Shown: positions 1 to 20,130, counted from the first letter of the stretch. The stretch is DNA of 64,000 nucleotides from Basidiobolus meristosporus CBS 931.73 (GCA_002104905.1 MCFE01000191.1:1-64000); one strand, 5' to 3'. Numbers and translations: made by a program. The notes: generated by a model from the letters alone, not told the origin.

Positions 1-259
1 TTGCCTATTTGGGATTGTTTGAAAGCACCAGTGGCTGAACACCAGTGGCTGAATAAATTGCTGCCGGTTGGCCATTCTTCTGGTAGTCATATCAGATCTC
101 GTCGTTATACTCAACTTAGCTTGTCCATCTTGTTCCCGCGACTTGACCTCATAGCATACTCGAACTCACCCCTAACTCATACATATCCATCCTGATTCCG
201 ATTTTGGTTGGCTGCATTTAATTCTTTGATAACTCATCTTTCAATAGCCCGTGGGGAAC

Positions 260-3200
260 ATGGCGCAATCCATTCCCCAGATATGCCACCCCTTATCTGC
301 TGCCCAGACAGAGATTTGGGTAGCGCAACAGTTGAACCCTGAAAGTGCTGTCTACAATATAGCCCAGTTCATTGAAATCCCGGGCACCATTGATGCTGTG
401 TTATTCGAGGAGGCATTGCGGCAAGTACTAATGGAGGCTGAGGCTATGCGACTCCAGTTCATTGAAGATGAAGCTGGTGTTAGACAGTTTGTTGGTCCAT
501 TGAACTGGTCATTACCCCTGATTGATACCAGCGCCGACCCCAATCCTCAAGCAGCTGCTGAAGCCTGGATGAGGGCTGATTGTCAAAGGCCACTGAATCT
601 TCGACAAGGCCATAAGTTTAGATATGCTTTGCTGAAGGTCGACACCTGTCGATATATTTGGTATCAATGTGTTCATCATATCTTGATAGATGGTTATAGC
701 GGTGCACTAATTGCACAACGTGCTGCTCAAGTATACAGTGCACTGGTGAGTCACACTACAACAGAATGCCTTATGAGACCGTTCGCACATCTCCTACAAA
801 GCGATACGAACTATCGAGCTTCGGCTCAATTTACCGAAGACCAAGAGTACTGGCTTAGTCACTGCAAAGATTGGCCTGAGGCAGTGACACTATCAGGAAA
901 AACTGCCCTAGCTTTACATCAGCCAATACGCCAGACAACCGTATTTTCCTCTCAGCTCGTTCCTACCTATGCTTCGGACCCTCGTCACTTCACGTACGTT
1001 GTGATAGCCGCTATAGCGACATATCTTCACCGTTGGACAGGTGCTCAAGAGGTATCCTTAGGCTTCCCAGCTAAAGCCCGATTTGGTGAGGACCGCCGCA
1101 TCCCTGGCATGGCAGCCAATGTGTTGCCTATTCGAGTTATCATACAGCCAGACACCACCTTTTCGCAATTAGCTGATCAGGTAGCATACGAGATTCGGGG
1201 CGGATTGAGACATCAGCGCTACCGGTGTGAGGAGTTAAAGCGAGAACCTCGATTTGGGCGAAGCCAACCCTTATTTGGACCCACGATCAATTTTATGCCG
1301 TTCGATTATAACTTGGCATTTGGTCAATATTTGTCCACAAACCACAACCTCCTTAACGGACCTATTGATGATCTGGCGATCAGTGTGTATACAGGATCTA
1401 ATGACTCTCCTTTACGAATCGATTTCGACGCCAACCCGATACTGTATACAAGTGCTGACCTGATGGCACATCAACGGCGTATTCTGGACCTACTGGATAT
1501 CCTTGTCTCAAACCCTTCTCAGCCAGTAGCCAGCATGAACATTATCAGCGCCTGTGAGAAAAGACAACTAATGGATTGGAATGATACCGCTATGCCATAT
1601 CCTGAACATCTATGTATCCACCAGCTTTTCGAAGAGCAGGTTGCACGCGCTCCCGATGCCACTGCCCTCGTGTATGCAGATCAGGTCTTAAGCTATGCTG
1701 CATTGAACGCGCGCGCCAATTGTCTCGCGCATCAACTCATCGAGCTGGGTGTTCGACCCGATCAACGTGTGGCAATCTGTGTGGAACGCTCGCCAGCGCT
1801 GATTGTGGGCCTGCTGGCCATTCTGAAGGCTGGCGGTGCCTACGTGCCTCTCGACCCAACCTACCCGACGGAGAGGCTAATGCACATTCTTACCGATGCG
1901 GCACCATCTATCCTGTTGGCTGATGAATGTGGACGCAACGCTCTGGGCGAGTCGGCACTCTCCTTCTTGACAGTGCTGGACCCAAACACCCCATCTGGGT
2001 TGGTTACCAGTAATCCATGTATCAATGGATTGACCTCCCACCACCTCGTCTATGTGATTTACACCTCTGGATCTACTGGTACTCCGAAGGGTGTGATGAT
2101 TGAGCATCATGGTTTGTCCAGTCTGTGCACATGGCACAACAGCACCTTTGATGTTCACATTGGTTCTAAGACCACCCTGAATGCCGGAGTGGCATTTGAT
2201 GCCAGTGCATGGGAGATTTGGCCTACTTTGATTAGCGGTGCCACACTTGTTATCCCTGACCCTTCAATTGCTCATAATATACCCGCTCTACTGAAATGGT
2301 GGAGTGATCAGAATTGTGATGTATCCTTTCTGGTCACACCTCTTGCTGTTATGGCTCTATGGGAGAATCAAACTCCCACAAGCTTGCGCTTTTTGTTGAC
2401 TGGTGGAGATCGCCTACCGCGTTTACCGGAATCACTAACCTCTGGACTGGCGATCGTGAACAATTATGGTCCTACCGAGACTACTATTGTCGCCACATCT
2501 GGAATAGTAAAACTCGACGGTGGCCCATCTCATATTGGTAGACCAATCGCCAATACACGTATTTATCTACTAGATATCAACGGTCATCCCGTCCCATTAG
2601 GAGCGATGGGTGAAATACACATCGGCGGAGTAGGCGTAGCTCGTGGTTACCTGAACCGCCCAGAGTTGACAGCAGAACGCTTCTTACCAGATCCATTTAG
2701 TAGGGCCGAAGGTGCTCGCATGTACAAGACTGGTGACATGGCGCGCTACCTACCAGATGGCAATCTTGAGTTCGTAGGTCGTAATGACTTCCAGGTCAAG
2801 ATCCGCGGATATCGAATCGAAGTGACCGAGATCGAGGCACATCTTGTTGAACATCCCATGGTAAAAGAGGCGGTGGTTCTGGCCCTAGGTGAAGAGAGCA
2901 ACAAGCGACTGGTTGCATACGTTGTTGCTGATCCTGTTGAACACCTCGCCAACTCCCTGCGCTCATACTTGGCACCAAGATTACCCGATTATATGCTGCC
3001 TGCCGCCTTTGTGCGTCTGGATACTTTTCCGCTTTCCTTCAATGGTAAGCTGGATCGCCGAGCACTCCCGGCTCCCGGAACAGAAGCATTTGTTCATCAA
3101 GCTTACGAAGCCCCACGAGGTGAGGTCGAAATAATACTCGCAACAATATGGGCTGAATTGTTAGGCTTAGAACGCGTCAGTCGCCATGACAACTTCTTTG

Positions 3201-6200
3201 AGCTTGGCGGCCATTCACTGCTTGCTGTACAGATGGTTGAGCGGCTATGTCGCCATGGTCTTACGGCCTCTATTCGTGTGCTGTTTGAGAGTCCGACGCT
3301 TAGTACATTGGCGCAATCACTGGATCAGTTCCGAGAGATAGCGATCCCACCTAACCTAATATCAGTCAACACCACCACATTGACACCAGACCTGCTACCG
3401 CTCATCAACCTCACACAAGCAGATATCGATCAAATTTTATCAGAAGTCCCCGGTGGGGTATCCAATATCCAGGATATCTATTCTTTATCTCCACTTCAGG
3501 ATGGAATCCTATTTCATCATTTGTTAACTACCGTGGGTGACCCCTATTTACTTGTAGCTCAAATGGCATTTGAGAGCAGCACCGTACTTGATCGCTACCT
3601 GGATGCGGCCCAACAGGTTGTCAATCGCCACGATATCTTGCGCACAGCATTCATCTGGGAGAACTTGTCAACACCAGCCCAGGTAGTCCTGCGCCATGCT
3701 CCCATATCCATCACCGAGCTATCACTGAATCCAAAGAATGGGCCTATCATCAAGCAACTCACCGATCGTTTCAACCCAAGTCAACATCGTATTAATCTGA
3801 GTCAGGCACCATTGCTGCGATTGATGATTGCTCAGGACACTGACGACCGTTGGATAGCTATATGCTTGATGCACCACCTCATTGGCGATCATTCAACACT
3901 AGATGTGATGCATTCTGAGATCCAGGCCTTCATCGAAGGCCGAGGTGATACTCTGCCAGCCCCGCAGCCATTCCGTAACCTAGTGGCACAAACACGAATG
4001 GATACTAACCAAGAGTCACACAAGCAATTTTTCACTGATATGTTGGCTGATATCGATGAGCCTACACTTCCTTTCGGGCTAGCCGAGGTTCATCGAGATG
4101 GTGCCAATATTACCAACTCTCAATGTATTCTGCCACAAGACTTAAATGATCGTCTGCGAACCCAAGCTAGGCGATTGGGTGTAAGTCTGGCCGGACTATG
4201 TCATCTGGCATGGGCCCGGGTACTTGCATGCACGAGTGGCCAACAGCAGGTAGTATTTGGCACAGTACTTATCGGAAGAACGCAGGCGGGTGAGGGAGTA
4301 GGCAGAGCGATGGGGCTTTTTATTAACACACTTCCACTGTGTGTTGACCTGGACTCTTGTAATGTTGTGGACAGCGTACGTCAGACTCATACTCGCTTAG
4401 CCACACTGCTACAACACGAGCATGCTTCGCTAGCCTTGGCCCAACGATGTAGTGGTGTATCAGCTGAAACACCATTATTTAGCGCTCTACTGAACTACAG
4501 GCATAGCACTATGCAGTCCAACCAAAATCTAGTATCTTCCGGGTTTGAGTTCTCAATCTCTCAAGAGCGAACTAGCTATCCGTTCACAATGAATGTAGAG
4601 GATTTTGGATCAGCACTTGGTCTGACCGCACAGATAGTAGAGCCGTTTGATTCGGTGCGTGTTTGCAACTACATGCAACAAACACTGCACAATTTGGTGG
4701 AGGCGCTGGAGAAGGATCCCCACATGCCGATTCGTAAGCTGGGGATTCTGCCAAGTGACGAACAGGAGCTATTGCTCCATGCTTGGAATGCCACATCTGC
4801 ACCTTACTCGGATTATCTATGTATCCACCAGCTTTTCGAAGAGCAGGTTGCACGCGCTCCGGATGCCACTGCCCTCGTGTATGCAGATCAGGTCTTAAGC
4901 TATGCTGCACTGAACGCGCGCGCCAATTGTCTCGCGCATCAACTCATCGAGCTGGGTGTTCGACCCGATCAACGTGTGGCAATCTGTGTGGAACGCTCGC
5001 CAGCGCTGATTGTGGGCCTGCTGGCCATTCTGAAGGCTGGCGGTGCCTACGTGCCTCTCGACCCAACCTACCCGACGGAGAGGCTAATGCACATTCTTAC
5101 CGATGCGGCGCCATCTATCCTGTTGGCTGATGAATGTGGACGCAACGCTCTGGGCGAGTCGGCACTCTCCTTCTTGACAGTGCTGGACCCAAACACCCCA
5201 TCTGGGTTGGTTACCAGTAATCCATGTATCAATGGATTGACCTCCCATCACCTAGCTTATGTGATCTATACCTCTGGCTCTACCGGCATTCCAAAAGGTG
5301 TGATGGTCGAGCACAGTGGTGTCGTGAATCTCATCCAGGATCAAATTGCCTGTACTGCGCTACGCCCATCAAGCCGGTTCTTGCATTTTACTACGTTCAG
5401 TTTCGACGTCAGCGTCTCGGAAATTTTTACTGCGCTTGGGTGTGGTGCAAGCTTACATCTGCCCTCTGATACTGTCCGTCGCAATCGGTATGAACTATGG
5501 AATTTCATGGAGGCCAACGCTATCACCCATGCGGTATTTCCCCCGGCCCTCCTCCAAAATGGCAATGATTTACCACTTTTGAGTAATCCTCTGACATTGG
5601 TACTGATAGGTGAGGCACCAAAGGCTGCATTGCTTGAATCCATGCTCCAGCAGGGCATTGTCATCAATGCTTACGGACCGACGGAGACAAGTGTTTGGTC
5701 TACCATATGGCGCTGCACCAATGAAGTCAGCAATGGGATGGTCTCCATTGGTCGACCAATCGCAAACACACGCATTTACCTATTGGATGCTACAGGCCAT
5801 CCTGTCCCGTTGGGTGCGATGGGTGAACTATACATAGGTGGCGCTGGTGTTGCTCGAGGCTACCTGAACCGCCCAGAGCTGACAGCTGAACGCTTCCTAT
5901 CTGATCCATTCAGTGGGACCGAAGGCGCTCGCATGTACAGGACTGGTGACATGGCGCGCTACCTGCCAGATGGCAGACTGGAGTTTGTGGGTCGTAATGA
6001 CTTCCAGGTCAAGATCCGCGGATATCGAATTGAACTAGACGAGATCGAGGCACATCTTGTTGAACATCCCATGGTAAAAGAGGCGGTGGTTCTGGCCCTA
6101 GGTGAAGAGAGCAACAAGCGACTGGTTGCATACGTTGTTGCTGATCCTGTTGAACACCTCGCCAACTCACTGCGCTCATACTTGGCACCAAGATTACCCG

Positions 6201-7318
6201 ACTATATGTTGCCTGCCGCCTTTGTGCGTCTGGATGCCTTGCCATTGTCGCCCAACGGTAAGCTGGATCGCCGAGCACTCCCGGTTCCCGGAACAGAAGC
6301 CTTTGCTCATCAAACTTACGAAGCCCCGCGTGGTGAAGCGGAGACAGCACTAGCAGAGATATGGACTGAGCTACTAGGCCTAGAACGTATCAGTCGCCAT
6401 GACAACTTCTTCGAGCTTGGTGGTCATTCTATACTGGCAGTACGCATGATTAGCCGTATTCGCACAAAACTAGGCGTCGAGATTGCCCTGAGAGTACTCT
6501 TTGAATCACCATCCATCGAAAAACTTGCGAATCAGTTACACACGGAAGGTACTTGCCAAAGTGGATCATTTGATGTATTGCTTCCCATTCAACTCAAAGG
6601 CAGCCTCCCTCCATTGTACTGTATTCATCCTGTTGTTGGCCTGAGCTGGAGTTACATCGGTCTGTCGAAACATTTAAGCCCAGAACAACCTATCTATGGT
6701 CTGCAAGCCCGTGGACTTGATGGAGAAGCACCGCTTGCAGAAACGATTGAAGCTATGGCATTAGACTATCTCAATCAGATTCGCAGTGTTCAGCCTAAAG
6801 GACCTTACCATTTGCTCGGCTGGTCATTTGGGGGAAGCGTTGCCCATAGTATTGCGACACTTTTGCAGCAACAAAACGAAACAGTTGCATTATTGGCTCT
6901 AATGGATAGCTCTCTAACGTACTCCCACCTAGATAATCAATGGGACATGGATCAAGTGAATACATACATAAAACTTCCTCACTACAGTGTTGACGACACC
7001 AAAGACCAAAGCGACTTCTTATGGACTAAGGTTCGACATATTGTCGAAAACAATTGTAATATCGCGAAGGCCTATACTCCACTTGTTTACTATGGCAATG
7101 TGCTGTTTTTTAGCGCCACCATACCGGAGGATGAAAGCTGTCCGCTAATCACACCTGATATGGTGAAGCCTTACATTCTCGGAGCTATCGAGACTTACCG
7201 CATTCCCTGTAAACACAGCGATATGGATAAACCAGTCCCAATTGGTGCAATTGGACGTATCCTAGCAAGAAGCTTGGAGCAATTGTCGCCTCCAGAGTCG
7301 TTGAGGGCTCGACTTTAA
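260..7318 (+). CDS. Intronless bimodular nonribosomal peptide synthetase, Cstarter-A-T-dual E/C-A-T-TE (about 2352 aa), bacterial lipopeptide type
   Basis: C1 HHILIDG (about 674); A3 loops YTSGSTGTPKG and YTSGSTGIPKG; YGPTE, YKTGD and NGKLDR cores twice; PCP FFELGGHSLLA and FFELGGHSILA; C2 GILFHHLLTTVGDPY plus HHLIGDHS; TE GWSFGG and CKHSDM. First ATG at 260. Confidence 0.97.
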   Translation: MAQSIPQICHPLSAAQTEIWVAQQLNPESAVYNIAQFIEIPGTIDAVLFEEALRQVLMEAEAMRLQFIEDEAGVRQFVGPLNWSLPLIDTSADPNPQAAAEAWMRADCQRPLNLRQGHKFRYALLKVDTCRYIWYQCVHHILIDGYSGALIAQRAAQVYSALVSHTTTECLMRPFAHLLQSDTNYRASAQFTEDQEYWLSHCKDWPEAVTLSGKTALALHQPIRQTTVFSSQLVPTYASDPRHFTYVVIAAIATYLHRWTGAQEVSLGFPAKARFGEDRRIPGMAANVLPIRVIIQPDTTFSQLADQVAYEIRGGLRHQRYRCEELKREPRFGRSQPLFGPTINFMPFDYNLAFGQYLSTNHNLLNGPIDDLAISVYTGSNDSPLRIDFDANPILYTSADLMAHQRRILDLLDILVSNPSQPVASMNIISACEKRQLMDWNDTAMPYPEHLCIHQLFEEQVARAPDATALVYADQVLSYAALNARANCLAHQLIELGVRPDQRVAICVERSPALIVGLLAILKAGGAYVPLDPTYPTERLMHILTDAAPSILLADECGRNALGESALSFLTVLDPNTPSGLVTSNPCINGLTSHHLVYVIYTSGSTGTPKGVMIEHHGLSSLCTWHNSTFDVHIGSKTTLNAGVAFDASAWEIWPTLISGATLVIPDPSIAHNIPALLKWWSDQNCDVSFLVTPLAVMALWENQTPTSLRFLLTGGDRLPRLPESLTSGLAIVNNYGPTETTIVATSGIVKLDGGPSHIGRPIANTRIYLLDINGHPVPLGAMGEIHIGGVGVARGYLNRPELTAERFLPDPFSRAEGARMYKTGDMARYLPDGNLEFVGRNDFQVKIRGYRIEVTEIEAHLVEHPMVKEAVVLALGEESNKRLVAYVVADPVEHLANSLRSYLAPRLPDYMLPAAFVRLDTFPLSFNGKLDRRALPAPGTEAFVHQAYEAPRGEVEIILATIWAELLGLERVSRHDNFFELGGHSLLAVQMVERLCRHGLTASIRVLFESPTLSTLAQSLDQFREIAIPPNLISVNTTTLTPDLLPLINLTQADIDQILSEVPGGVSNIQDIYSLSPLQDGILFHHLLTTVGDPYLLVAQMAFESSTVLDRYLDAAQQVVNRHDILRTAFIWENLSTPAQVVLRHAPISITELSLNPKNGPIIKQLTDRFNPSQHRINLSQAPLLRLMIAQDTDDRWIAICLMHHLIGDHSTLDVMHSEIQAFIEGRGDTLPAPQPFRNLVAQTRMDTNQESHKQFFTDMLADIDEPTLPFGLAEVHRDGANITNSQCILPQDLNDRLRTQARRLGVSLAGLCHLAWARVLACTSGQQQVVFGTVLIGRTQAGEGVGRAMGLFINTLPLCVDLDSCNVVDSVRQTHTRLATLLQHEHASLALAQRCSGVSAETPLFSALLNYRHSTMQSNQNLVSSGFEFSISQERTSYPFTMNVEDFGSALGLTAQIVEPFDSVRVCNYMQQTLHNLVEALEKDPHMPIRKLGILPSDEQELLLHAWNATSAPYSDYLCIHQLFEEQVARAPDATALVYADQVLSYAALNARANCLAHQLIELGVRPDQRVAICVERSPALIVGLLAILKAGGAYVPLDPTYPTERLMHILTDAAPSILLADECGRNALGESALSFLTVLDPNTPSGLVTSNPCINGLTSHHLAYVIYTSGSTGIPKGVMVEHSGVVNLIQDQIACTALRPSSRFLHFTTFSFDVSVSEIFTALGCGASLHLPSDTVRRNRYELWNFMEANAITHAVFPPALLQNGNDLPLLSNPLTLVLIGEAPKAALLESMLQQGIVINAYGPTETSVWSTIWRCTNEVSNGMVSIGRPIANTRIYLLDATGHPVPLGAMGELYIGGAGVARGYLNRPELTAERFLSDPFSGTEGARMYRTGDMARYLPDGRLEFVGRNDFQVKIRGYRIELDEIEAHLVEHPMVKEAVVLALGEESNKRLVAYVVADPVEHLANSLRSYLAPRLPDYMLPAAFVRLDALPLSPNGKLDRRALPVPGTEAFAHQTYEAPRGEAETALAEIWTELLGLERISRHDNFFELGGHSILAVRMISRIRTKLGVEIALRVLFESPSIEKLANQLHTEGTCQSGSFDVLLPIQLKGSLPPLYCIHPVVGLSWSYIGLSKHLSPEQPIYGLQARGLDGEAPLAETIEAMALDYLNQIRSVQPKGPYHLLGWSFGGSVAHSIATLLQQQNETVALLALMDSSLTYSHLDNQWDMDQVNTYIKLPHYSVDDTKDQSDFLWTKVRHIVENNCNIAKAYTPLVYYGNVLFFSATIPEDESCPLITPDMVKPYILGAIETYRIPCKHSDMDKPVPIGAIGRILARSLEQLSPPESLRARL
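1608..5247 (+). repeat. Internal NRPS duplication: 1608-2040 vs 4815-5247 (433 bp, near identical, offset 3207); second block about 2729-3200 vs 5941-6420 (offset 3213)
   Basis: Base-by-base comparison shows about 3 mismatches in the first block; the intervening A-domain core is strongly divergent. Confidence 0.93.
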
Positions 7319-7500
7319 CTGGATTGACTACGCTCGTGGTTAATCTTTGCAAATCTTCAAAATGTCCATAATCTTATGCAACAAAAGAACGGTTCTTTAA
7401 CTCTAGAACATCCTTTAATATTTAGAAATCCTTGTTTTTGACTCAATAAATTTAGAATTTGCAGAAGATTGCTATGGGTATAGTGACTAGAGAAGTGTGT

Positions 7501-8364
7501 TTAGCAGGGTCCCATATCAGTCCAGACTCCGTTTTTGCCTGGAATCTCGTTTTGAGTCCACCACTTGGCTTGCCAAAGGTGCCCGTCATAAGTCACTTTT
7601 TGATCACCATTGTATGCAGCACTAGCATCCCAGGCTGGAACTCCGACACATGAACCAGTGGTTGGGGTTGGTTTGGTCGAGGTTGTAGTGGAAGTTGAAG
7701 GCTTCACTGTGGTGGTAGGAGCAGGAGTTGCGCCATCGTCCGTGGCCCCCACAGTAATAATCGGACGGTTATCCAGCAGCTCCTGGCCATCTCCTTGACC
7801 AATATCAAACTCAGGTATAGTGGGATAGCCAGGAAGGTTGGCGACCATTAGCTTAGGGCCTGTGACTTTTCCGCCGGGGATCCCTCCGTTGATAGTGATG
7901 TCAATACAATTCATGTAGTACTCCCGATTCCCTGAAGCGTTGACCCAGGTCCAGGCCAAAGTAGCACGTTTACTAGGGGGAGCGGTCGCGGGAATCGGTA
8001 CATCAAAACTGAGGCTGTCTTTAAAGCAGTTACGGACAACCGTTTTCAAGACGACAAAGGTCTGGTCGTTATCATAGGAGAGTGCAAATTGGCAATGGCC
8101 TCCGTCGTGGGTGTTCCCTGGTGCGAATTGGACTTTCACAGTATCCCCGGCATTGTAGGTGTATTCGACCTTCCCTGGCTTATAACCTTTGCAAGGAAAT
8201 ACTCCCAATGGACTGTTCATATCATAATCAACGTCTCCAACGGACTGATAGTACTCGCTAAAGGTGGACTTCCGAGGCGCGGGCGATTGAATTTCCATAT
8301 GGCCAGATACGGAGCTCAAGGCACATAGCGAGGCAGCAGCAAGTAGATAGGAAGGAACTCTCAT
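7501..8364 (-). CDS. Secreted AA11-type lytic polysaccharide monooxygenase with Thr/Pro linker and C-terminal CBM5/12 chitin-binding module
   Basis: Signal peptide ending SSVSG then His1 (HMEIQSP); FPCKG, THDGGHCQFAL, TLAWTWVN, NREYYMNC; C-terminal AWDASAAYNGDQKVTYDGHLWQAKWWTQ. Intronless. Confidence 0.9.
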   Translation of the reverse strand: MRVPSYLLAAASLCALSSVSGHMEIQSPAPRKSTFSEYYQSVGDVDYDMNSPLGVFPCKGYKPGKVEYTYNAGDTVKVQFAPGNTHDGGHCQFALSYDNDQTFVVLKTVVRNCFKDSLSFDVPIPATAPPSKRATLAWTWVNASGNREYYMNCIDITINGGIPGGKVTGPKLMVANLPGYPTIPEFDIGQGDGQELLDNRPIITVGATDDGATPAPTTTVKPSTSTTTSTKPTPTTGSCVGVPAWDASAAYNGDQKVTYDGHLWQAKWWTQNEIPGKNGVWTDMGPC

Positions 8365-8466
8365 GTCTTACTAGAGGGGTTGGTTGAATGATTGTATAGA
8401 GACCAAGGATCTGAGGCTCTTTATATTTCAAAGTTCGGATGTGTGGCTCGGAAAAATGGCAATAAC

Positions 8467-8606
8467 TGATTTACTAACTGAATGGAAGGAATGTCAATAG
8501 TTGATTTATTAACTGGATGACAGAAATGGTTATAGTTGACTTACCAACTAGATTACTGATTTAATAAGTAGATTATAGTAACTGTTATGGCCGATTTATT
8601 AATTTA
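8467..8606. repeat. Degenerate ~35-bp tandem array with core TGATTTAYTAACT upstream of LPMO1
   Basis: Cores start at 8467, 8502, 8537, 8557 and 8592 (spacing 35, 35, 20, 35); the first two units match at 27/35. Confidence 0.6.
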
Positions 8607-9200
8607 GAGGGAATCATAAATAGATACATATATTACCTCAACTTGGTCAACAATGGTACAAGCACAAAGTGGCAGCAATCAATTTGAACTTTTCGATTAC
8701 CGAACAAATGGCTCCTATGCGTGGCTGTCAGCATTTCCATCGCTCAAGGCCATAACACATGCGTGTGGTACGGTGGCGAATTCAGTGGCTGCTATCACAA
8801 TAGCATACAAACCTCTACACCGTATAATGCAATTGACAATATAATCCTAATTTAACATGAATTCGTGGGAAACTCCGACATAGTTGGCAGGGATTTACGT
8901 TAAACTCATAAGCCGACATTCCAACGTATCTTCTATTTCTACTTCACCTTTAAATGCCAAATCTCTGTCAGCACAATCCATGCAACCTATGACGAGATTG
9001 ATGTGTCTCCCATATTTGATGGTCGGTTGAAGAGTAGCAACATCAGCACTAGTTTTTTGAGTAAATACGTTATAAAATTTGCTTTCCCCTCAACAACAAT
9101 TACCTATAGTATTCTTTGTAGCAGATCAATCAAATTCAAACGGGTTTATTCGATTGAGGTAACACAAGATTCCTAACAATCTCCTGGCAGCACAAGATTC

Positions 9201-10106
9201 CTAACAAGCCCCTAGATCAGTCCATACTCCTTGCTTGCCCGGAGTTTCATTCTGGGTCCACCATTTGGCCTGCCAGAGGTGACCATTGTAAGTCACCTTT
9301 TGAGATCCATTGTAGCTAGTACCAGCATTCCATGCCGTGATTCCAGCACATTTACCACTTCCTGGGTCATTAGATTCGGTTGGCTTGGTAGAAGTCGTGC
9401 CAGATGGTTTAGAGGTAGAGGTAGATGTAGCAGTAGTGGTAGGCGCTGTTGTGGAAGTAGGATCTGGGGTTGAGCCATCGTCCGAAGAGCCAACAGTAAT
9501 TATGGGTCTTTTATCAAGTAAATCACGGCCATCGCCTTGGCCAAGGTTCATCTCGGGAATAGTGGGGTATCCAGGAAGATTGGCAACCATTAGTTTGGGA
9601 CCAGTAATTGTCCCCCCAGGCACTCCACCCTTGATAGTGATATCAATACAGTTCATATAATACTCCCGGTTGCCCACCGCATTCACCCAGGTCCATGCCA
9701 AGGTCGCCCTCTTGCTGGGAGGAGCAGTTGCAGGGATCGGGACATCAAAGGAGAGACCTTTCATGAAGCAATCACGAACAACAGTCTTCAAGACCACAAA
9801 CGTTTTGTCATTGTCGTATGAAAGGGCAAATTGGCAATGGCCGCCACTATGGGTATTTCCGTTGTCAAATTGAACCTGAACAGTATCACCAGCGTTGTAA
9901 GAGTATTCAACATATCCCGCCTTATAGCCTTTACAAGGGAAGATCCCCAACGGTCCGTTCATATCATAGTCAATATCGCCAATTGACCGATAATATTTAC
10001 TGAAAGTGGATTTGCGTGGAGCAGGGGATTTGATCTCCATGTGTCCAGACACGGAGCCAAGCAGGCAAAGAGATACAGTGGCTAAAAGGTAGAATTGACC
10101 GCGCAT
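9201..10106 (-). CDS. Second tandem AA11-type LPMO with linker and CBM5/12
   Basis: GSVSG then HMEIKSP; THSGGHCQFAL; NREYYMNC; AWNAGTSYNGSQKVTYNGHLWQAKWWTQ. Clear paralog of 7501-8364. Intronless. Confidence 0.9.
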   Translation of the reverse strand: MRGQFYLLATVSLCLLGSVSGHMEIKSPAPRKSTFSKYYRSIGDIDYDMNGPLGIFPCKGYKAGYVEYSYNAGDTVQVQFDNGNTHSGGHCQFALSYDNDKTFVVLKTVVRDCFMKGLSFDVPIPATAPPSKRATLAWTWVNAVGNREYYMNCIDITIKGGVPGGTITGPKLMVANLPGYPTIPEMNLGQGDGRDLLDKRPIITVGSSDDGSTPDPTSTTAPTTTATSTSTSKPSGTTSTKPTESNDPGSGKCAGITAWNAGTSYNGSQKVTYNGHLWQAKWWTQNETPGKQGVWTDLGAC

Positions 10107-11086
10107 TTCTGAGTTGATGTTGTTGTAGAACCGGCCACTTCACCCCTTTATATCTTATGAAAGCGGATTGGTACTACTTCACTGCTGCTCCGGAAACACT
10201 ATGCCCAGCAACTTTCACTCTTCCAGCGTTTCTTATGTTACTCCGACAACGGGATCCCGTTTTAAGACCGGCAAATGAGCGAAGGAATTAACCAAGAAAT
10301 CTGCCTAATAAAGATAAACTGGCAATTATAACTCGCAAGATTCAACCATAACTCAATGCGCACGAAAGAGATGTACGTAATATAAACATATATGTGTGCT
10401 TTTTCTTGTTACCAATCCTGAATGCTCGTCAAGTACTATTATTAAACGATGCATAAACTCTATCCGAAATAAAGCTTGATTCCCTGGGACCTTACACGAA
10501 GTAGCTCTATTAAGATAAATTGATGGGAGCGGTCGCAATAGCTGGGAACGCTCAGCCACCAGTCTTGTTCAACAAACCGGAATAGACCTGAAATTGAAGC
10601 TGAGCCGCGTGCTAGGATGTGCTAGACCTTAACCCTCCTTTACTCATACGAAACTCCCTATAAAACTGACCTGGTAACTCGACCATTTGAAGTTAGAGCA
10701 AATGCACCCAGGGCCTATAGTACGGTCTATTATAAACCGCCAATAGGTCACCACCATGTTAATTGGTCATTTGAAACATCAAGGCCACGCGGGCAATGAT
10801 CTTCGCTCACCTGTACGTATGCTGTATTAAGAAGAGGGATTTTCCAATAAAAGTCATGAGAATTGCCAAATTTATGTGAATCGGGGCCTGACAAAACAAG
10901 GCCATTTGGGTGGTGAATAAGAATTATCCGTATTTTTAAGGTTCGAGCCAAATTGCCATAAGCGAACCATAAAAACCAAGCATTTCTAAAGAATTGCCAT
11001 AAATGAAACAAGAAAGAAGCATTTATTGTTCGCAAAAACTGAGAGGTATATATATACACTAGTATAATTCAGGATACATTGCTTAA

Positions 11087-12609
11087 CTAACCACCAATTC
11101 GAATCATAGGTCTATTTTTTGTGTTGGAGAGCTCAAACATATCAGCATGCTCCTTCTTCTTGTTCTTCACTGCCAAGCTGATAATGGACAGCAACTCTTC
11201 ATCGGAAGCATTCCGGCGCATCATATCACGCAGGCTGACCTCCTCATTGTCAAAGAGACAAACCTAGGTTCGGGTTTAAATTATTTTCGGTTCTAAATCA
11301 TATATATATCTATCGGTGTAATACCTTTATGTTCCCGTCGGCTGTAAGGCGCAGTCTGTTGCAAGTGGCACAAAAATGATCAGTCATCGACGAGATGAAC
11401 CCGAATTGCCCGCGGAACCCTGGAATTCTAAATCCTTTGGAGGTGGGATTGGGATCGTCTTCCACTTTGACGACGCTTTTGAATTCCGCCTCGATCGAAT
11501 CCAGCAGCTCTTTGTAGGGAACCAGCTTGTTGTCCTTCCACTTGTTACCTAGAAATCGGCTCAATTTAGCAACCATTTTGCTCCGGGTCTTGTACAGTGC
11601 CGTGCAACTAACCGTCAAATGGCATGTATTCGATGAAACGAACATCGATCGGACTGTTCTCGGTCATTCTTATAAAATCAAGCACCTCTTGGTCGTTGAC
11701 TCCACGCATGACCACGTTGTTTACTTTGACTGGGTGGACGCCTAGGTCAATCGCTTGCTGGATGCTCTCCAACACTCTTTCGTGCCCTCTTCGGCGAGTC
11801 ATGATCTCGAACTTGAACTTATCCAAGGTATCCAGACTGAAATTCAATGCGTTTAACCCGTGCTTCACCATGTCAGGTAGCTTTCGCTTGATGGCGATTC
11901 CGTTGGTGGTCATTGCTATGGTGCGAAGGCCCTTTTCTCTTAATTTTCCAAGCTCCTCTAAAGAAACAATCAGTATTGGTGGACTCGGCAGTGAAAGCAC
12001 CTTCATGTAAGACACGTACCAACTAGTTCAACTATGTCCTTCCTAACCGTGGGCTCGCCACCAGTTAGCCGGATTTTCGTCACGCCCTGTTCTACAAACA
12101 GCCTAGCCAGGCGTAAGATTTCTTCTGTAGATAACATTTTTTCAGTAGGCTGCAAGTCAATTCCTTCTGCAGGCATACAGTACAAGCCTTTACGAGAGGA
12201 AAAAAGGTTCAGTACATTTCTCCACTGGGAGGTTAGAAGTTCTAACAACAGTTGGCACTTACAGCGCAGGTTACATTTCTCTGTGACGGAAATACGTAGG
12301 TAGTCATGATTACGTTCATAATTATCCCTCAACACTGGTGAATATGGTCTCTCGGCATCGATAGCAGCAATCTTAGACTGAAGCATAATGCAAATACGGT
12401 TAGCGTCGTGGCCCCTTATCAGCAAGGCAATCGGTGAACACAAAAATAAGCACCTGGACTCTTAAGCGGATGGCATCTGAACCGGTCAAAACGACAGCAC
12501 TTTGGACCTTATTTCTAAGTTGGGACGACGTGTGTAGGCGGCTTCGTTGAGAGAGTAGCGTGGGAGAGCCGGATTTGTGGAATATGTTAGAGCGGAGAAA
12601 AACCCTCAT
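11087..12609 (-). CDS. moaA: GTP 3',8-cyclase (MoaA/MOCS1A, radical SAM; molybdenum cofactor biosynthesis), spliced, with a putative mitochondrial presequence
   Basis: [14 protein letters not shown] then YCMP across an intron; KIRLTGGEP; MTTNG; FIEYMP; [14 protein letters not shown]; C-terminus PMIRIGG* with stop at 11087-11089. Confidence 0.93.
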
Positions 12610-13419
12610 TCTGACCCTTGAAGGTAGAGTATGTATTATATATAGGTCAATGAACCGCTAAGAAAATAGCAGCGATTAAGTGTTTACAGAGAAGATAAAA
12701 ACTGGACAGGTTTGGGCAGGAACTGTGTAGGATATACAGTATACGTATGCTAAAGCCAGCAAGTTGACTTTATCTACTTTGGAGAAAATGGCTGAAGATC
12801 AGGATCACCATCAAAAAGTGGCAACCGAGTGGATATTTATTCAACAAAGTGATATCGTTTGAACCAGAGAAGGATGATTTTTTTACCGGTCCTGCGAGAT
12901 GAGCCTCATTATTACAGTAATGATAAAAGATAGACAACCCTGGGATTCCGAGTGGTATTTGTCAGAGTGCGATCATTTCGCATGATTCCCACCATAATCA
13001 TTGGAGCCACACGCCAGGAGATTGAACACCAAGTGCAAACACAAACACCACACGGCTTGAGATTATCGGCGGAAATGAAATTGCCATGAATACAAGGATT
13101 CGGAGGAAAACAGAGGTACATATAAGGAGCAGATTAACTATTTGGAAAATGATTACAATTCCATGGCGCCCATATATGGTTGGATAAGAGGTGAGGTCCC
13201 TATTATGGAAGCATTGTGCCAAACTGGGCGTGGGACCAGAGCTTCGTAAGATCTAGTCATGGCCATTCATCAGGGCTGTGGTGCTTTGGTTCCAGACAAG
13301 CGTTTCACACATACTTCTCTCCGGGCATTTTCCAATTGACCACAATTGGTGTTCGGTTAGTTATATTTGGTCATCCCTTTAATGTAAATTTTGGAAAACA
13401 ATGGGCTGTGACTGCTGGG

Positions 13420-14754
13420 CTAAGATGTGCGGCTCAAATATTTCTGAAGCTCCTCGTCCATTTCGAACACTCTCATATGCTCAGCAAGTAAGCCGACGCA
13501 CATCTCCACACCGTCGCCGTCGTATCGGGGCAATGAAATGGCAAGCCCATCGAATTTACCAGCCGGCAATCTGGCTCTTACTGGCGTGCCATATCCGAAG
13601 TCCACTTCGTAAATGGGAAACTGATGCCAGCTCGTGAATGCGAAGTCCTTCCCGAGGAAGGAAGAGAAGCCGGGTTGAATGTTGGTCTTGATTTCTTTGG
13701 AATCGACCCAGCTCAGCGCATCCCGAATCCTTTCCGAGGTCATTTGGTTGACACTTGCTCGAATGCTTAATCCAGCGGTTCGCAAAGGCTGGGAGATCAG
13801 CTGATTTGCCGTCATCTGGGAGCATGGGTAGAAATTGGCATTTCCAAAATATCCCAACGGCAGCGGTGGACATAATCGGCGACGCCCATCGCAAGCAAAC
13901 CCGCACTTTAACTTCATCTCCCCGGAGAGCCCTCTGGCCCTAGTCACTGCTCTCCAGACAAGAGCTATCAGGGCATCATTGGTCGATACTTGCACATCGC
14001 CAGGGTCTCCTTGGGCAGCTTCCTTCAGCTCAGCTAGTTTCTCCTTTCGTATATGAAATAGCTTCACTTCCATAGGTGGTAGGGTCGGCGGAGTCTTTTT
14101 CTCTTTCGTTTCTTCCGCAGCAGTGGTCGTGGCGGGTGCTGGTTCAACATAGAGGTATTCTGGGTGCTCTTGCAACGGCTCTCCTGTAGTATTCAGCAAT
14201 TCCCGATCGTGAGACACCGGTTCGCAGGCTAACCCACGACACATCTTGGACCAATTAAGCAAGAGAGAGAAAAATGCATTGCCATCTCCAACACTATGGT
14301 GTAAGGCAGTTCCGAGAATCACTGACCCACAGGGCAGTCTGGTGATCTGGACGGCGAAGATGTATGGTTGGCTGGGGAGTAAGAAGATCCCGCAAGGGAA
14401 ATATTCGTCGGATAAGTTTTGAAAGTCTTGATCGAAAAACCAGCCCGCCTCTTGATCGGTCTTCGCCTCCACGAAGAGTATTCCTTGGTTGTTCAGTAGG
14501 ATCTCAAGGTTCCCATCCGCCAGGTTGTTCAAGGTCCCAGTGAGAATGGGGTAATGCTTCAACAACGCTACCAGACCTAATTTCAGGCTTTCGGTGGGCA
14601 TAAAGTCCGTCGCTTGGCCAGAATTCTCAAAGAATAGTGCGATTCTGGTGAAGCATCGAGGCATAACCACATCATTGTTGGACAGGCGGATTGCTTTGGA
14701 AGGGGGTGAGGGTTCGGCTTGAAGTACGGTGCGGCTCTCGATTGACAGGGTCAT
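13420..14754 (-). CDS. BAHD/transferase-family CoA-dependent acyltransferase, intronless
   Basis: HHSVGDG (HxxxD), VDFGYG (DFGWG-like), YFGNA, STNDALIALVW. Confidence 0.88.
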   Translation of the reverse strand: MTLSIESRTVLQAEPSPPSKAIRLSNNDVVMPRCFTRIALFFENSGQATDFMPTESLKLGLVALLKHYPILTGTLNNLADGNLEILLNNQGILFVEAKTDQEAGWFFDQDFQNLSDEYFPCGIFLLPSQPYIFAVQITRLPCGSVILGTALHHSVGDGNAFFSLLLNWSKMCRGLACEPVSHDRELLNTTGEPLQEHPEYLYVEPAPATTTAAEETKEKKTPPTLPPMEVKLFHIRKEKLAELKEAAQGDPGDVQVSTNDALIALVWRAVTRARGLSGEMKLKCGFACDGRRRLCPPLPLGYFGNANFYPCSQMTANQLISQPLRTAGLSIRASVNQMTSERIRDALSWVDSKEIKTNIQPGFSSFLGKDFAFTSWHQFPIYEVDFGYGTPVRARLPAGKFDGLAISLPRYDGDGVEMCVGLLAEHMRVFEMDEELQKYLSRTS

Positions 14755-14773
14755 GGTGCAACTGGATAGTCAT

Positions 14774-14831
14774 TTGATTCGTAATCATTTATTCATTTCA
14801 TATTGATTCGTAACCATTTATTCATTTCATA
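14774..14831. repeat. 29-bp tandem duplication just upstream of the BAHD start codon
   Basis: ttgattcgtaatcatttattcatttcata (14774) and ttgattcgtaaccatttattcatttcata (14803), 1 mismatch. Confidence 0.85.
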
Positions 14832-14986
14832 CTGATATATTACTAGACAATTACACATGAATCTAGACAGATGAATTCCTTAACGCCGGTAGTGTGTAGA
14901 TTTAAATACGAGGAAAAGGAGCGGGATAAAGTAAGAAAAGTATTAACTAGAAAAGGGGCGATGAAAAAGTAGAGTATGGCATGCGT

Positions 14987-16869
<1,883 letters not shown>

Positions 16870-17898
16870 CTTTCGTTCACTCAATCAAAGCTATTCAATA
16901 AAGCGTGTTGGCCTGAGTTTCTGATTGTTCTTCCTGAGGTGGGTGGGGTAGAAATGGTCGGTGAATACAAGTACAAGATGTTGCGGTGGGAGCGATGATG
17001 CTGTATGCGTATGACTTGAGCGAGAGAAAGAATATTGCTGTGGGTAAAGTATGATCTAAGGTATCAATTTCGCTTTAACGTCTATTTTGACAACTAGGAG
17101 TCTTCACAATGGGACATGATGACAGTTACAGAAAGGTTGAGTTAGTGGAAAATTTTGTAGAGTTGGGGACTAACAAGTGTATCTAGTTTACCAGCAAGAG
17201 GATAGACAGCAACGGAGGCGAGGAGATATTATACCAAGAGGATATGGAGTACTGAGGGCCTTGGTAGAATTCAAGAGAGTGGCAAAGCAAAAGGCTTAGT
17301 AAACAAACATTAAACTACAATTTCAGCTGAGAAGCCTCACCCAACAGCAAGGGAGTTTGTACGAATTCGTAAACTACTTGGCACACGATGAATTAATTTG
17401 GGCATATCTCAACTGGATTATATTGAATACTAAAATCTCGATGATTTCGGAAAAAACCACCACATTGTGCCCGCATTGACTAGGATTGCCCACCACACAT
17501 CAATGGGCCAATCGCAGACGTGCTGAAATACCAAATCCCGAAACTTGGTTGAGTCGAGGGCACTACAAACATAGATAATCAGGTTGCAGCAGGATGGTTG
17601 TGAGTGGTATTTATAGATAGCATCAAGGGAGCATCAAGAGAGCATAATGGAATCCACTGTTCAACAATGTCATTGATTATTGAGCGCGGAGAAAAGGAAG
17701 ATTATATCTTGGGATGGGCTAGAAATTCCATGGTGTTCTCAGAAGTTACCGGCAATTGTAACCACAACACGACATAATGGTACAACATCCTTTAACGGAT
17801 ATCGGGGATTACTTCCAAATCCATAAAATGGGCCATGCCAACGTTGATCATCCCGCGTTAACCTAGCCCTCCCAACGCTTCCCTTTAATCCCCCTAAG

Positions 17899-19939
17899 AT
17901 GAATACTTCCAAGTTAAAATTAACCTTGCTAGCTAGCCTAATATGTAGTCTGATCCACGTAAACCCCACACTACAAGCTCGACAGCTCGATCCATGTGCC
18001 ACTCTAGCACGTAGCATAGAGGATTTCCTAACCCACGACACAGTTTTAGCATGCTATAAGAACATCCCATTTGTGAACAGTGTAAGAGAGCAGACAGTGG
18101 CGAATCTAGCGAAGGCCCTTCAATTCTACGTCTTTAAGGATGTTGCCAAGGAGGGTGCACAGGGGGTGGATCTGAAGAAGGAATTAGAGGATATAGCCAT
18201 GGCAGAGTTCCTGAATGATTTCCAGTTCCAACAGAGAGTTCAGAAAATCTTCACACCATTGAACGACGGTCATGTGTGGTATCAGCCAAAGTGCTATCGT
18301 AGCATGAACTTTATCCAGGCCTTTCCGTTAACCTCGTATGTGGATTCTGCTGGTGACCAGCGGGTCTACATACTAGATCAGCCTGTATTCCGACAGGGCC
18401 TATACAACAAAGTCAGGGAGGTCACGGGGGTCAACGTTCAGAATTTTCTGGGAATGGAGGTGACGGAGATCGATGGAGTACCTGTTCTAGAGGCGTTGCA
18501 GCGATTTGCCGATGAGGAGCTGGGAAAAACAAAAGATCCCCAGCAGCGATTTGAAATGCTACTTGCCAATCACGCCTTGACCTCGTACGGACAGTGGAGA
18601 AGTTTCTTTGGATACTGGGCCTCACCAGGCATAGTCCCAGATAAGTCCAATGTCACCTACACACTCCAGTCTCCTCGCCATGGCTCCCTCAAAGTAACCA
18701 TCCCCTGGATTGCCATCCCACAAATTTCGCTAAAGAGTTTCTGGAGCACATTTGGGTACAAAAGGCTGTATTGCGATCCGGATCCTACCAGCCCATACGG
18801 GATGGAGTTTTTGAACCCCTCCACCTTGGGCCTCCTACCGGAACCAGGGCCTGGTCAATCCGATACGGAGAGCCTGTCGACTACCTACAGTAGCTATCCG
18901 ACTTTGTTAAACAATCCGCTAGTCAATACCAACCCATTGAAGTTCTACCAGCTTGATGGGAACACCGGGGTCTTGGTATTGCCAACATTTTCGCTTGGGG
19001 ACCAGTTCACCTACGATAGCTTTGATTCCGCCATGGACCAGGGGCTTGAAAAATTTAGACGACTTGGAATACGAAAGCTAATCCTGGTAAGTGTGATACG
19101 GCGAGCCGTTGGACAAATGATGGGTTCTAACCGTTATCTAGGACTTCACAAATAATCCTGGTGGATCGATCTGCCTTGGCTACAAGCTGCTGAACCATCT
19201 ATTCCCTCAGATCCCTCGCCAGCAACTTTATTATCACTCAGACTTGGTCCGCTCCCCACTGTCGATGGAGCTCGCGAAACGCAATTCCCTCTGGCAATGT
19301 TCTAATTACTACAATCCTGACGAAAACAGCCTGCACAAAGGGCTCTCTTGTATGTTCCCTGGCACCACGTATATCAGAGGCGGCGAGCAAGCCAACTTCA
19401 CCCAGAAATTGCAATACAATTGTGATTTCCAAGTTAACCGAAGGATCAACCGCAAGCCATGGTTTCAGACAAAAGATGTGGCGATCGTAACCAACGGAAG
19501 ATGTGCGTCAACATGCTCCTCAGTCTCCAAGTAGGTCATTTCTGGTGATTCGGACGGTCATCGCCTAACCACCAATCTCCTCGTTTCCAGCTTCCTACAA
19601 CGGGTCATGAAAGTTCGCACGTTTGTGACTTCACCGTTCCCCAAAGGCACCAATCCGCCCATCAGCACAGCACCAGGCGGGATGGTATTTTCCTACGACA
19701 ATCTGTTATGGCAGATCACTGAAGCCGGACTCAGCAGCAGAGAGGATGCGCCTAAGAATTTTCCACAGAAAGCGGATTTTTATTTCACCGTCATGGAGAA
19801 CTATGGCTGGAATACCAGCTTACCCGACGAGTACGCTCAAAGGCCCGCCACGGACAGGATAGTTTTGGACGAAAGCAATTTCTTTAGTCCAGTCGAGGTA
19901 TGGACGGAGATTTCGCAAAAGCTGAACTACAGCAAATAA
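17899..19939 (+). CDS. Secreted S41-family (tail-specific/CPAF-like) serine peptidase, 2 introns
   Basis: Signal peptide; LNDGHVWY; VTEIDGVP; GVLVLPTF; spliced ILDFTNNPGGSICLG; VAIVTNGRCASTCS. Confidence 0.75.
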
Positions 19940-20130
19940 TGAGCAACTGTGCTGTGGGTAAGCAAATAACAAGTAACCGCGCTGTGTGAAAGAATACCAT
20001 TATTTAGTTAACCGCTTCGCTATCTGTATATACGAAACCATGTAAATAAACCAATCATCGTTCATTGATATGCTGGCTATTCAGTATTGTTTAGTGTGAT
20101 CATTGCTGTTGAACAGAAGAGACATATACA

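What the first reader, a model, noticed from the sequence alone, without database searches (positions are those of the whole stretch)
260..7318. Bacterial lipopeptide-type NRPS embedded in a fungal chromosome: probable HGT from an endofungal Burkholderiaceae lineage
Seen: a 7-kb intronless C-A-T-C-A-T-TE gene contiguous with fungal AA11 genes and spliced housekeeping genes, with no operon partners. Known: Dikarya NRPSs usually release through a terminal C-like or R domain, whereas starter C, dual E/C and type I TE together are typical of proteobacterial lipopeptide synthetases. From recall, the N-terminal domain (PLSAAQTEIWVAQQLNPES...QAAAEAWMRAD...NHNLLNGP...LRIDFDANP...AHQRR) closely resembles the acyl-loading starter C domains of Mycetohabitans/Mycoavidus NRPSs. 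Bacteria-derived NRPSs are reported in Mortierella and Basidiobolus. Inference: an integrated HGT gene making a small N-acyl dipeptide of unknown structure.
Basis: partly seen in the sequence, partly recalled or inferred. Interest (0 to 1): 0.85.

Follow-up and report, generated by a model that had tools for sequence, protein, structure and literature searches.

The report
Bacterial-type lipopeptide synthetase gene in Basidiobolus
This fungus carries an intact, transcribed, intron-free two-module peptide-making enzyme whose closest relatives are in bacteria that live inside other fungi; gene transfer of this kind into this fungus was already published in 2020, so it is a well-supported example rather than a new phenomenon.

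Summary
Window 260-7318(+) is one uninterrupted 2352-aa ORF with the domain order starter-C, A, T, dual E/C, A, T, TE, and every core motif is intact. It lies beside fungal AA11 LPMO genes, ORC2 and copia elements. An independent assembly of reads bridges the NRPS/AA11 junction at even depth. A transcript-like run covers only the coding parts.

The N-terminal domain is about 57% identical to the crystallised RzmA starter C of Mycetohabitans. Its best matches among billions of proteins and 185,579 bacterial genomes are Mycoavidus endobacteria (53-60%), then Mycetohabitans. The C2 and TE trees give the same company.

Three caveats apply:
- The contig starts 259 bp upstream of the ATG, so "no partners" is untestable on that side.
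- An AU test cannot say whether the fungal domain is nested in the bacterial clade or sister to it.
- Best identity is only about 60%, so this is not a recent transfer from a sampled bacterium.

The record is GCA_002104905.1. From memory, and from earlier agents' notes, that is Basidiobolus meristosporus. Tabima et al. 2020 already reported two-A-domain, beta-proteobacteria-like, HGT-derived NRPSs in that fungus.

The predicted product is a medium- or long-chain N-acyl-D-Leu-Xaa. The scan noted this stretch before (s1-197587).

The parts
260..7318 (+). Whole NRPS gene: 2352 aa, Cs-A1-T1-E/C-A2-T2-TE, no intron.
   Evidence: The identical protein is already a called gene on the public record.
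260..1579 (+). Starter condensation domain (Cs), aa 1-440, with HHILIDG at aa 139-145. At the acyl-gate positions, in RzmA numbering, it has Q36, Q136, V138, I143 and G148.
   Evidence: PDB 7C1H/7C1K/7C1P (RzmA-Cs), E 1e-139 over the full length. Gate residues were read from the alignments, using the residue roles given in PMC7804268.
1580..3139 (+). Adenylation domain A1, with specificity code DAWFLGNIV(K), a Leu-type code.
   Evidence: The nearest A-domain cores carry DAWFLGNVV or DAWFLGQVV.
3152..3364 (+). Carrier domain T1, with GGHSL at aa 983.
3380..4729 (+). Dual epimerisation/condensation domain (E/C), with HHLLTTVGD at aa 1086 and HHLIGDH at aa 1205.
   Evidence: for the motifs, which are defined in 10.1101/2020.08.21.262279. 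for the tree; best PDB matches are McyB and PvdL.
4787..6274 (+). Adenylation domain A2, with code DVSVVIAVW(K), which I could not assign. Its flanks are 96-99% identical in nucleotides to those of A1, while its core is only 20-42% identical in amino acids.
6347..6532 (+). Carrier domain T2, with GGHSI at aa 2054.
6611..7315 (+). Type I thioesterase with Ser (GWSFGG, aa 2187-2192), Asp (ALMDS) and His (CKHSDM).
   Evidence: The best PDB matches are 7CRN (NRPS TE) and the EntF TE.
7319..7500 (.). 182-bp spacer between the convergent NRPS gene and the first AA11 gene.
   Evidence: contigs of 3105 and 3099 nt from runs X1 and X2 span 6172-9276 with one mismatch. Depth is 232-234 on both sides.
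7501..8364 (-). Fungal AA11 LPMO with a C-terminal CBM5/12. It is context, not part of the pathway.

Best explanation
This is a genuine, chromosomally integrated, transcribed fungal gene of bacterial ancestry. Its nearest sampled relatives are NRPSs of endofungal Burkholderiaceae, first Mycoavidus and then Mycetohabitans.

The inferred mechanism has four steps:
1. The full-length RzmA-type starter C takes an acyl group from acyl-CoA and puts it on L-Leu held on T1. Because the gate positions are small (Gly at RzmA R148, Val at Y138), the acyl group is probably medium or long chain (about C8-C12) rather than acetyl.
2. The dual E/C domain epimerises acyl-Leu to the D form.
3. The same domain condenses it with a second, unassigned hydrophobic residue loaded by A2.
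4. The type I TE releases N-acyl-D-Leu-Xaa, most simply by hydrolysis.

Shown here: the domain order, intact motifs, phylogenetic company, the junction with fungal DNA, and transcript-like coverage. Inferred: the acyl donor and chain length, the stereochemistry, the second residue, the mode of release, and the direction and date of transfer. The transfer is not recent, given about 60% best identity, a long branch, and in-gene conversion between A1 and A2 since.
For: - Architecture and motifs.
- Cs identity: RzmA-Cs structures at E 1e-139.
- Gate logic (PMC7804268): R148G shifts RzmA from C2 to C8-C10, and adding Y138A shifts it to C10-C12. The window protein has G148 and V138.
- Closest relatives of C1: Mycoavidus sp. 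HKI at 60%, Mycoavidus SF9855 at 57%, Mycoavidus BRE MAGs at 53-59% and Mycetohabitans at 45-51%. Everything else is at or below 46%.
- True Mortierellaceae NRPSs lack this Cs.
- Trees: the C1 clade has support 100, with the window in the Mycoavidus-type subclade at 93. The C2 clade has support 95. The TE clade has support 100.
- Integration: read contigs bridge 6172-9276 at equal depth, and the flanks are eukaryotic.
- Transcription: run X3 covers 3400-7326 and an AA11 exon but no intergenic DNA, and its depth rises from 5' to 3'.
- A1 has a Leu-type code.
- The TE triad is aligned to 7CRN.
- Published precedent in the same fungus: PMC7466969.
Against: - The AU test does not reject a tree with the window's C1 outside all 40 bacterial rows (p 0.53). 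Nesting, and so the donor, is unresolved.
- C2 groups weakly (support 89) with a genuinely fungal Podila epicladia NRPS. A fungus-to-fungus route, or parallel transfers, stays open.
- Codon usage is neither clearly host-like nor donor-like. RSCU correlation is 0.25 with host ORFs and 0.43 with Mycoavidus NRPSs, from a small host sample.
- The upstream side is cut off by the contig end.
- Run X3 is labelled 'DNA?' by the tool. That it is RNA is my reading of its coverage pattern.
- The A2 code matches nothing I could assign, and a full-text paper search for it found nothing.
- Starter C domains in Mortierella NRPSs are inactive remnants (PMC9365243), so activity here is unproven.
- The species name rests on my memory of the accession and on earlier agents' notes.
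Confidence: 0.65

Rival explanations
1. The gene is of bacterial origin, but the donor was not an endofungal Burkholderiaceae. It could have been an unsampled free-living or gut-associated proteobacterium related to that clade, or the gene could have come by way of a Mortierellaceae fungus. On this view the Mycoavidus affinity only reflects which genomes have been sequenced.
For: The AU test allows the window's C1 to sit outside the whole bacterial clade. Best identity is only 60%. C2 is sister to a true fungal Podila epicladia gene. Tabima et al. favour gut bacteria as donors. The papers I searched that mention both Basidiobolus and Mycoavidus did not surface any report of endobacteria in Basidiobolus.
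Against: Three domains independently land in the same Mycoavidus, Mycetohabitans and Mortierellaceae company. In the pattern-seeded scan of 185,579 bacterial species genomes, the matches above 46% identity were all Mycoavidus or Mycetohabitans. Another NRPS of this genome was noted by an earlier agent to have the same affinity (s1-233522, unchecked).
Confidence: 0.25
2. The starter C is a structural remnant with no acyl-transfer activity, as in Mortierella MalA, MpcA and MpbA. The enzyme then makes a free D-Leu-Xaa dipeptide or a diketopiperazine, or acylation happens in trans.
For: The Cs domains in Mortierella alpina NRPSs are truncated or inactive.
Against: The domain here is full length (440 aa, aligned end to end with RzmA-Cs). 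It keeps HHxxxDG and is 57-60% identical to biochemically active or bacterial Cs domains. The Mortierellaceae NRPSs in my protein set have no detectable match to it.
Confidence: 0.07
3. The NRPS is bacterial DNA, from an endosymbiont or a contaminant, wrongly joined to the end of a fungal contig.
For: The gene occupies the first 7.3 kb of the contig, a typical place for chimeric joins. It has no introns. Its GC content (0.50) is a little above that of its neighbours (0.44-0.48).
Against: Independent read contigs from X1 and X2 cross the junction (6172-9276) with one mismatch. Depth is 203-278 on the NRPS and 232-234 on the fungal side. The transcript-like run holds the gene at high depth. GC3 is 0.47, against 0.56-0.58 in Mycoavidus NRPS genes. 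No bacterium in the databases is more than 60% identical. Tabima et al. screened HGT candidates by coverage z-score.
Confidence: 0.03

Closest known systems
RzmA (rhizomide) and HolA (holrhizin) synthetases of Mycetohabitans rhizoxinica, starter C domain (PDB 7C1H and related entries; PMC7804268)
   Same: An N-terminal Cs of the same fold and length, about 57% identical, with HHxxxDG and most of the acyl-tunnel residues conserved. It sits next to a Leu-type first A domain.
   Different: RzmA has 7 modules and uses acetyl-CoA (gate residue R148). HolA uses C8 (gate residue A149). The window enzyme has 2 modules and has G148/V138, which predicts a longer acyl chain. It is encoded in a fungus.
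Mycoavidus NRPSs: Mycoavidus sp. HKI Cs-A-T-TE (P0134), and the BRE MAG genes P0135 (Cs-A-T-C-T-TE) and P0023
   Same: These are the closest Cs domains (54-60%) and close TE domains (52-58%). P0134, P0135 and P0023 share Gly at gate position 148. They are short Cs-initiated, TE-terminated assembly lines.
   Different: They sit in bacterial genomic context, have higher GC3, and differ in module number. Their products are unknown to me.
Basidiobolus meristosporus 'surfactin-like clade' NRPSs reported as HGT candidates (Tabima et al. 2020, PMC7466969)
   Same: Same genome, if my reading of the accession is right. They are intronless and expressed, and their best hit is beta-proteobacterial. Three gene models have two A domains (337511, 372991, 298977), and this gene is very probably one of them.
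   Different: That paper analysed A domains only, proposed gut bacteria as donors, and did not describe the starter C, the E/C domain or a product. I could not map the gene model number.
Mortierella alpina MpcA, MpbA and MalA (Wurlitzer et al.; PMC9365243)
   Same: Bacterial-like NRPSs in an early-diverging fungus, with dual E/C domains and a terminal TE. HGT from endobacteria has been proposed for them.
   Different: Those genes have about 9 introns, 5-7 modules, and truncated, inactive Cs domains derived from LCL domains. Here the Cs is full length and of the acyl-CoA type, and the gene has no intron.

Membership tests
Modular type I NRPS | C, A, T and TE domains in collinear order with intact core motifs | tested here: met
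   Pfam and the motif scan.
Acyl-type starter C (Cs) domains, RzmA/HolA/CDA-C1 group | An N-terminal C domain with no upstream carrier domain in the same protein | tested here: met
   The ORF starts at aa 1 of the domain, with in-frame stops upstream. Bacterial homologues align from their residue 1.
Acyl-type starter C (Cs) domains, RzmA/HolA/CDA-C1 group | Sequence kinship with biochemically proven Cs domains rather than with LCL, DCL or E/C domains | tested here: met
   RzmA-Cs at E 1e-139 and CDA-C1 at E 7e-65 rank above all elongation C domains. The clade has support 100.
Acyl-type starter C (Cs) domains, RzmA/HolA/CDA-C1 group | Transfers an acyl group from acyl-CoA (or acyl-ACP) to the first aminoacyl-S-T | not testable with these tools
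   This needs an enzyme assay. Only the catalytic His motif and the gate residues could be read.
Dual epimerisation/condensation (E/C) domains | An N-terminal HH[I/L]xxxxGD motif plus the HHxxxD(G/H) catalytic motif | tested here: met
   HHLLTTVGD at aa 1086 and HHLIGDH at aa 1205.
Dual epimerisation/condensation (E/C) domains | A D-configured upstream residue in the product | not testable with these tools
   The product is unknown.
HGT-derived bacterial-like NRPSs of early-diverging fungi (Tabima 2020; Wurlitzer 2021) | Physically linked to vertically inherited fungal genes, with even read depth across the junction | tested here: met
HGT-derived bacterial-like NRPSs of early-diverging fungi (Tabima 2020; Wurlitzer 2021) | Domains nest among bacterial sequences, not among Dikarya NRPS clades | tested here: met
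   The exact branching inside the clade is unresolved.
Recent transfer from an extant endosymbiont | Near-identity to a donor gene and donor-like composition | tested here: not met
   Best identity is 60% (C1), 71% (C2) and 58% (TE). GC3 is 0.47, against 0.56-0.58 in the Mycoavidus NRPS genes sampled.
Biosynthetic gene cluster with tailoring or partner genes | Adjacent co-functional genes such as an acyl-CoA ligase, a transporter or a PPTase | tested here: inconclusive
   Downstream lie two AA11 genes, a MoaA-like gene, a BAHD transferase and a kinase, with no obvious partner. The upstream side is lost at the contig end.

The most novel reading that the evidence does not exclude
Basidiobolus lies outside the Mucoromycota, the only fungi in which, to my knowledge, Burkholderia-related endobacteria are established. 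On this reading it took this gene, and perhaps several other NRPS genes, from a Mycoavidus-like endobacterium. That would point to a past or overlooked endosymbiosis in this lineage. The enzyme would also be the first fungal NRPS to use bacterial acyl-CoA-dependent lipoinitiation, making an undescribed N-acyl-D-Leu-Xaa lipodipeptide.
Probability: 0.25. Interest if true: 0.65.

Novelty: new member of a known kind. Interest (0 to 1): 0.4.

Why it matters
This is a clean case of an expressed bacterial-type assembly line fixed in a fungal chromosome, characterised domain by domain. Three points go beyond the 2020 report:
- Its kin are specifically the endofungal Burkholderiaceae, not gut bacteria.
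- Its starter C is full length and of the lipoinitiating RzmA type, unlike the dead starter domains of the Mortierella enzymes.
- Published gate-residue rules give a testable prediction of chain length.

At only 7 kb and without introns, it is an easy target for heterologous expression.

Tried and rejected
- GC content as evidence against a Burkholderiaceae donor. I dropped this because the Mycoavidus flanks and genes are themselves only 0.49-0.55 GC.
- Codon-usage comparison. It was inconclusive, because the host sample is small and host genes correlate poorly with one another.
- Treating 'Podila verticillata' and 'Linnemannia gamsii' hits as fungal relatives. The contig carrying the P. verticillata hit P0107 has tightly packed bacterial-type genes, so at least that hit is probably endosymbiont DNA. 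The others were not checked. The Podila epicladia gene is truly fungal (F-box and WD40 flanks).
- Mapping the gene to a JGI model number. No supplementary files are held for PMC7466969, and a search for the accession found nothing.
- Assigning A2 from its code. No paper holds DVSVVIAVWK or its neighbours' codes.
- A second AU test (window plus the Mycetohabitans subclade) did not finish in time.
- Runs X4-X6, which carry the same species label, hold almost none of the stretch. This says nothing about absence, because the index finds only near-identical DNA.
- The NCBIfam top hits MxcG and EntF at first suggested an aryl-capping C domain. The PDB and clade results overruled that.

Full report
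**What is there.** Window 251..7318(+) is a single 2355-codon ORF. The first ATG is at 260, giving 2352 aa, and in-frame stops lie directly upstream. Pfam finds Condensation x2, AMP-binding plus AMP-binding_C x2, PP-binding x2 and Thioesterase x1, in the order C-A-T-C-A-T-TE.

All core motifs are intact:
- HHILIDG in C1
- HHLLTTVGD and HHLIGDH in C2
- A3, A4, A5, A7, A8 and A10 in both A domains
- GGHSL and GGHSI in the carrier domains
- GWSFGG in the TE, with Asp and His aligned to the solved NRPS thioesterase 7CRN

The same protein is already a called gene on the public record.

**Where it is.** The look-up of encoding contigs places the gene on GCA_002104905.1, record MCFE01000191.1, a 137,082-bp contig whose base 1 is window base 1. 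To my knowledge this is the JGI assembly of Basidiobolus meristosporus CBS 931.73. Earlier agents' notes on this genome say the same. I did not verify the name independently.

The downstream genes are:
- two convergent AA11 LPMO genes with CBM5/12 (PDB 7P3U and 4MAH)
- a spliced MoaA-like radical-SAM gene
- an intronless eukaryote-type BAHD acyltransferase
- a kinase

ORC2, FGGY kinases and copia elements lie further on. None of these is an obvious pathway partner.

**Is it really in the fungal chromosome?** Logan contigs of two DNA-like runs from the probable source sample cross the junction. A 3105-nt contig and a 3099-nt contig span 6172-9276 with one mismatch. Depth is 232-234 on the fungal side and 203-278 on the unique parts of the NRPS. 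These are the same reads under a different assembler, so the support is only partly independent. The equal depth argues against a bacterial contaminant.

A third run (27 Mb of contigs) covers 3400-7326 and an AA11 exon (8060-8317) but none of the intergenic DNA. Its depth rises from about 30 at the 5' side to about 177 at the 3' side. I read this as a transcriptome in which the gene is well expressed, although the tool labels the run 'DNA?'. Tabima et al. likewise report high expression for some of the two- and three-A-domain beta-proteobacteria-like NRPS models of this fungus.

**What kind of domains?**
- **C1.** It matches the crystallised starter C of RzmA (rhizomide synthetase, Mycetohabitans rhizoxinica; 7C1H, 7C1K, 7C1P) at E 1e-139 over its whole length. 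CDA-C1, ObiF1 and EntF rank well behind. The NCBIfam hits to MxcG and EntF are therefore more distant relatives.
- **C2.** It has both dual E/C signatures defined in the Mortierella work.
- **A1.** Its code is DAWFLGNIV(K). Its nearest cores read DAWFLGNVV, the classic Leu code, which also validates the anchor positions.
- **A2.** Its code is DVSVVIAVW(K). Its nearest cores are aromatic-type (DAWTIAAIC, DASTIAAVC, DVSTVGAIW). The bulky Ile301 and Trp331 leave the substrate unassigned, and no paper holds the code.

**Acyl chain prediction.** Zhong et al. (PMC7804268) showed that RzmA R148 gates the acyl pocket. R148G moves the preference from C2 to C8-C10, and adding Y138A moves it to C10-C12. 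HolA, which uses C8, has Ala at that position. In the alignments the window enzyme has Gly at 148 and Val at 138, with Q36 and Q136 conserved. Gly148 is shared with Mycoavidus P0134, P0135 and P0023. Hence the inference of a medium- or long-chain acyl group rather than acetyl.

**Relatives.**

| Search | Result |
|---|---|
| C1 against 5.8 billion proteins | Mycoavidus sp. HKI 60%; proteins of 'Mycoavidus cysteinexigens BRE' MAGs 54-59% (titles, bacterial gene contexts); Mycoavidus SF9855 57%; Mycetohabitans 46-50%; everything else at or below 45% |
| Pattern-seeded scan of 185,579 bacterial and archaeal species genomes | Eleven Mycoavidus loci first (53-59%), then Mycetohabitans (45-51%) and Paraburkholderia (46%), then a drop to 41% or less in actinomycetes |
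| Exhaustive HMMER search of 1.84 billion representatives | No closer lineage |

'Podila verticillata' protein P0107 sits on a contig with densely packed bacterial-type genes, so it is probably endosymbiont DNA. The Mortierellaceae-labelled NRPSs in my protein set, including the demonstrably fungal Podila epicladia gene, have no match to this Cs. That agrees with reports that Mortierella starter domains are truncated or inactive.

**Trees** (IQ-TREE quick, LG+C20).
- C1 lies in a 41-row clade (SH-aLRT 100) of Mycoavidus-type, Mycetohabitans-type and one Paraburkholderia sequence. It falls inside the Mycoavidus-type subclade (93), on a long branch (0.58, against 0.1-0.2 for most Mycoavidus rows).
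- C2 lies in a 24-row clade (95) of the same bacteria plus Mortierellaceae. It is weakly sister (89) to Podila epicladia at 71% identity, with Photorhabdus outside.
- TE lies in a 26-row clade (100) of the same taxa.
- An AU test does not reject moving the window's C1 outside all 40 bacterial rows (p 0.53). So 'in or sister to' is all that can be claimed.

**Age.** Best identities are 58-71%, the branch is long, and GC3 is 0.47 against 0.56-0.58 in the Mycoavidus NRPS genes sampled. These speak against a recent transfer from any sampled bacterium. The RSCU comparison is otherwise inconclusive. No orthologue of 60% or more appears elsewhere in the protein collection.

Inside the gene, the A1 and A2 flanks are 96-99% identical in nucleotides, while the specificity-bearing cores are 20-42% identical in amino acids. 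This shows gene conversion or a subdomain exchange after the modules arose. The scan noted this separately (s1-197587).

**Comparison with the literature.** Tabima et al. 2020 (PMC7466969) already described B. meristosporus CBS 931.73 NRPSs of a 'surfactin-like' bacterial A-domain clade. Three of these models have two A domains (337511, 372991, 298977). The paper classes such genes as HGT candidates with beta-proteobacterial best hits, mostly intronless, coverage-checked and expressed, and attributes the transfers to gut bacteria. I could not map this gene to a model number. Model 372991, which is expressed and has a beta-proteobacterial best hit, fits best.

The items new here are the domain-level typing (a full-length lipoinitiating Cs, and the E/C domain), the specific kinship with endofungal Burkholderiaceae, and the product prediction. 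In the library searched I found no description of a full-length RzmA-type Cs in a fungal NRPS.

**Verdict.** It is a further, better-dissected member of a published class, not a new phenomenon.

Noticed in passing
window 1580-3140 versus 4787-6350: A1 and A2 are a mosaic. The N-terminal 160 codons are 96-99% identical in nucleotides and the C-terminal parts are 78-96% identical. The pocket-bearing cores (aa 601-762 versus 1670-1833) are only 20-42% identical in amino acids and have different nearest relatives, Leu-type for A1 and aromatic-type for A2. This points to gene conversion of the flanks or a natural subdomain swap.
   Followed up: partly
L005 (GCA_015679645.1 JAAAVC010000320.1), 2515-14433: GenBank protein KAF9388086.1, labelled Podila verticillata, lies on a contig with tightly packed, intron-free genes for an RluD-like pseudouridine synthase, an S49 peptidase and an aromatic amino acid lyase. 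The contig is probably Mycoavidus endosymbiont DNA filed as fungal.
   Followed up: partly
L003 (Mycoavidus BRE-AD073 scaffold_1), 1-18042: The Mycoavidus Cs-initiated NRPS P0023 sits next to a formyltransferase-A-T-TE NRPS and a tryptophan-dioxygenase-like gene. More than one gene may share this source.
   Followed up: no
window 13420-14754 (-): An intronless 444-aa BAHD-type acyltransferase (PF02458) of eukaryotic type lies 6 kb downstream of the NRPS. No link to the pathway has been shown.
   Followed up: partly
window 7501-8364 (-) and 9201-10106 (-): Two tandem paralogous AA11 LPMO genes, each with a C-terminal CBM5/12 chitin-binding module.
   Followed up: partly
window 42425-44171 and 51104-52849, with 45231-48963 between them: Two FGGY carbohydrate-kinase copies flank a copia-type LTR retroelement (gag, integrase, RT). 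A second copia fragment lies at 60669-63425 in AT-rich DNA (GC 0.37-0.39).
   Followed up: no
L007 (Mycoavidus BRE-AD073 scaffold_3), 18688-22317: A large NACHT/NB-ARC/HEAT-repeat protein is encoded next to a Mycoavidus NRPS. This fits the published sharing of NOD-like receptors between Mycoavidus and Mortierellomycota.
   Followed up: no
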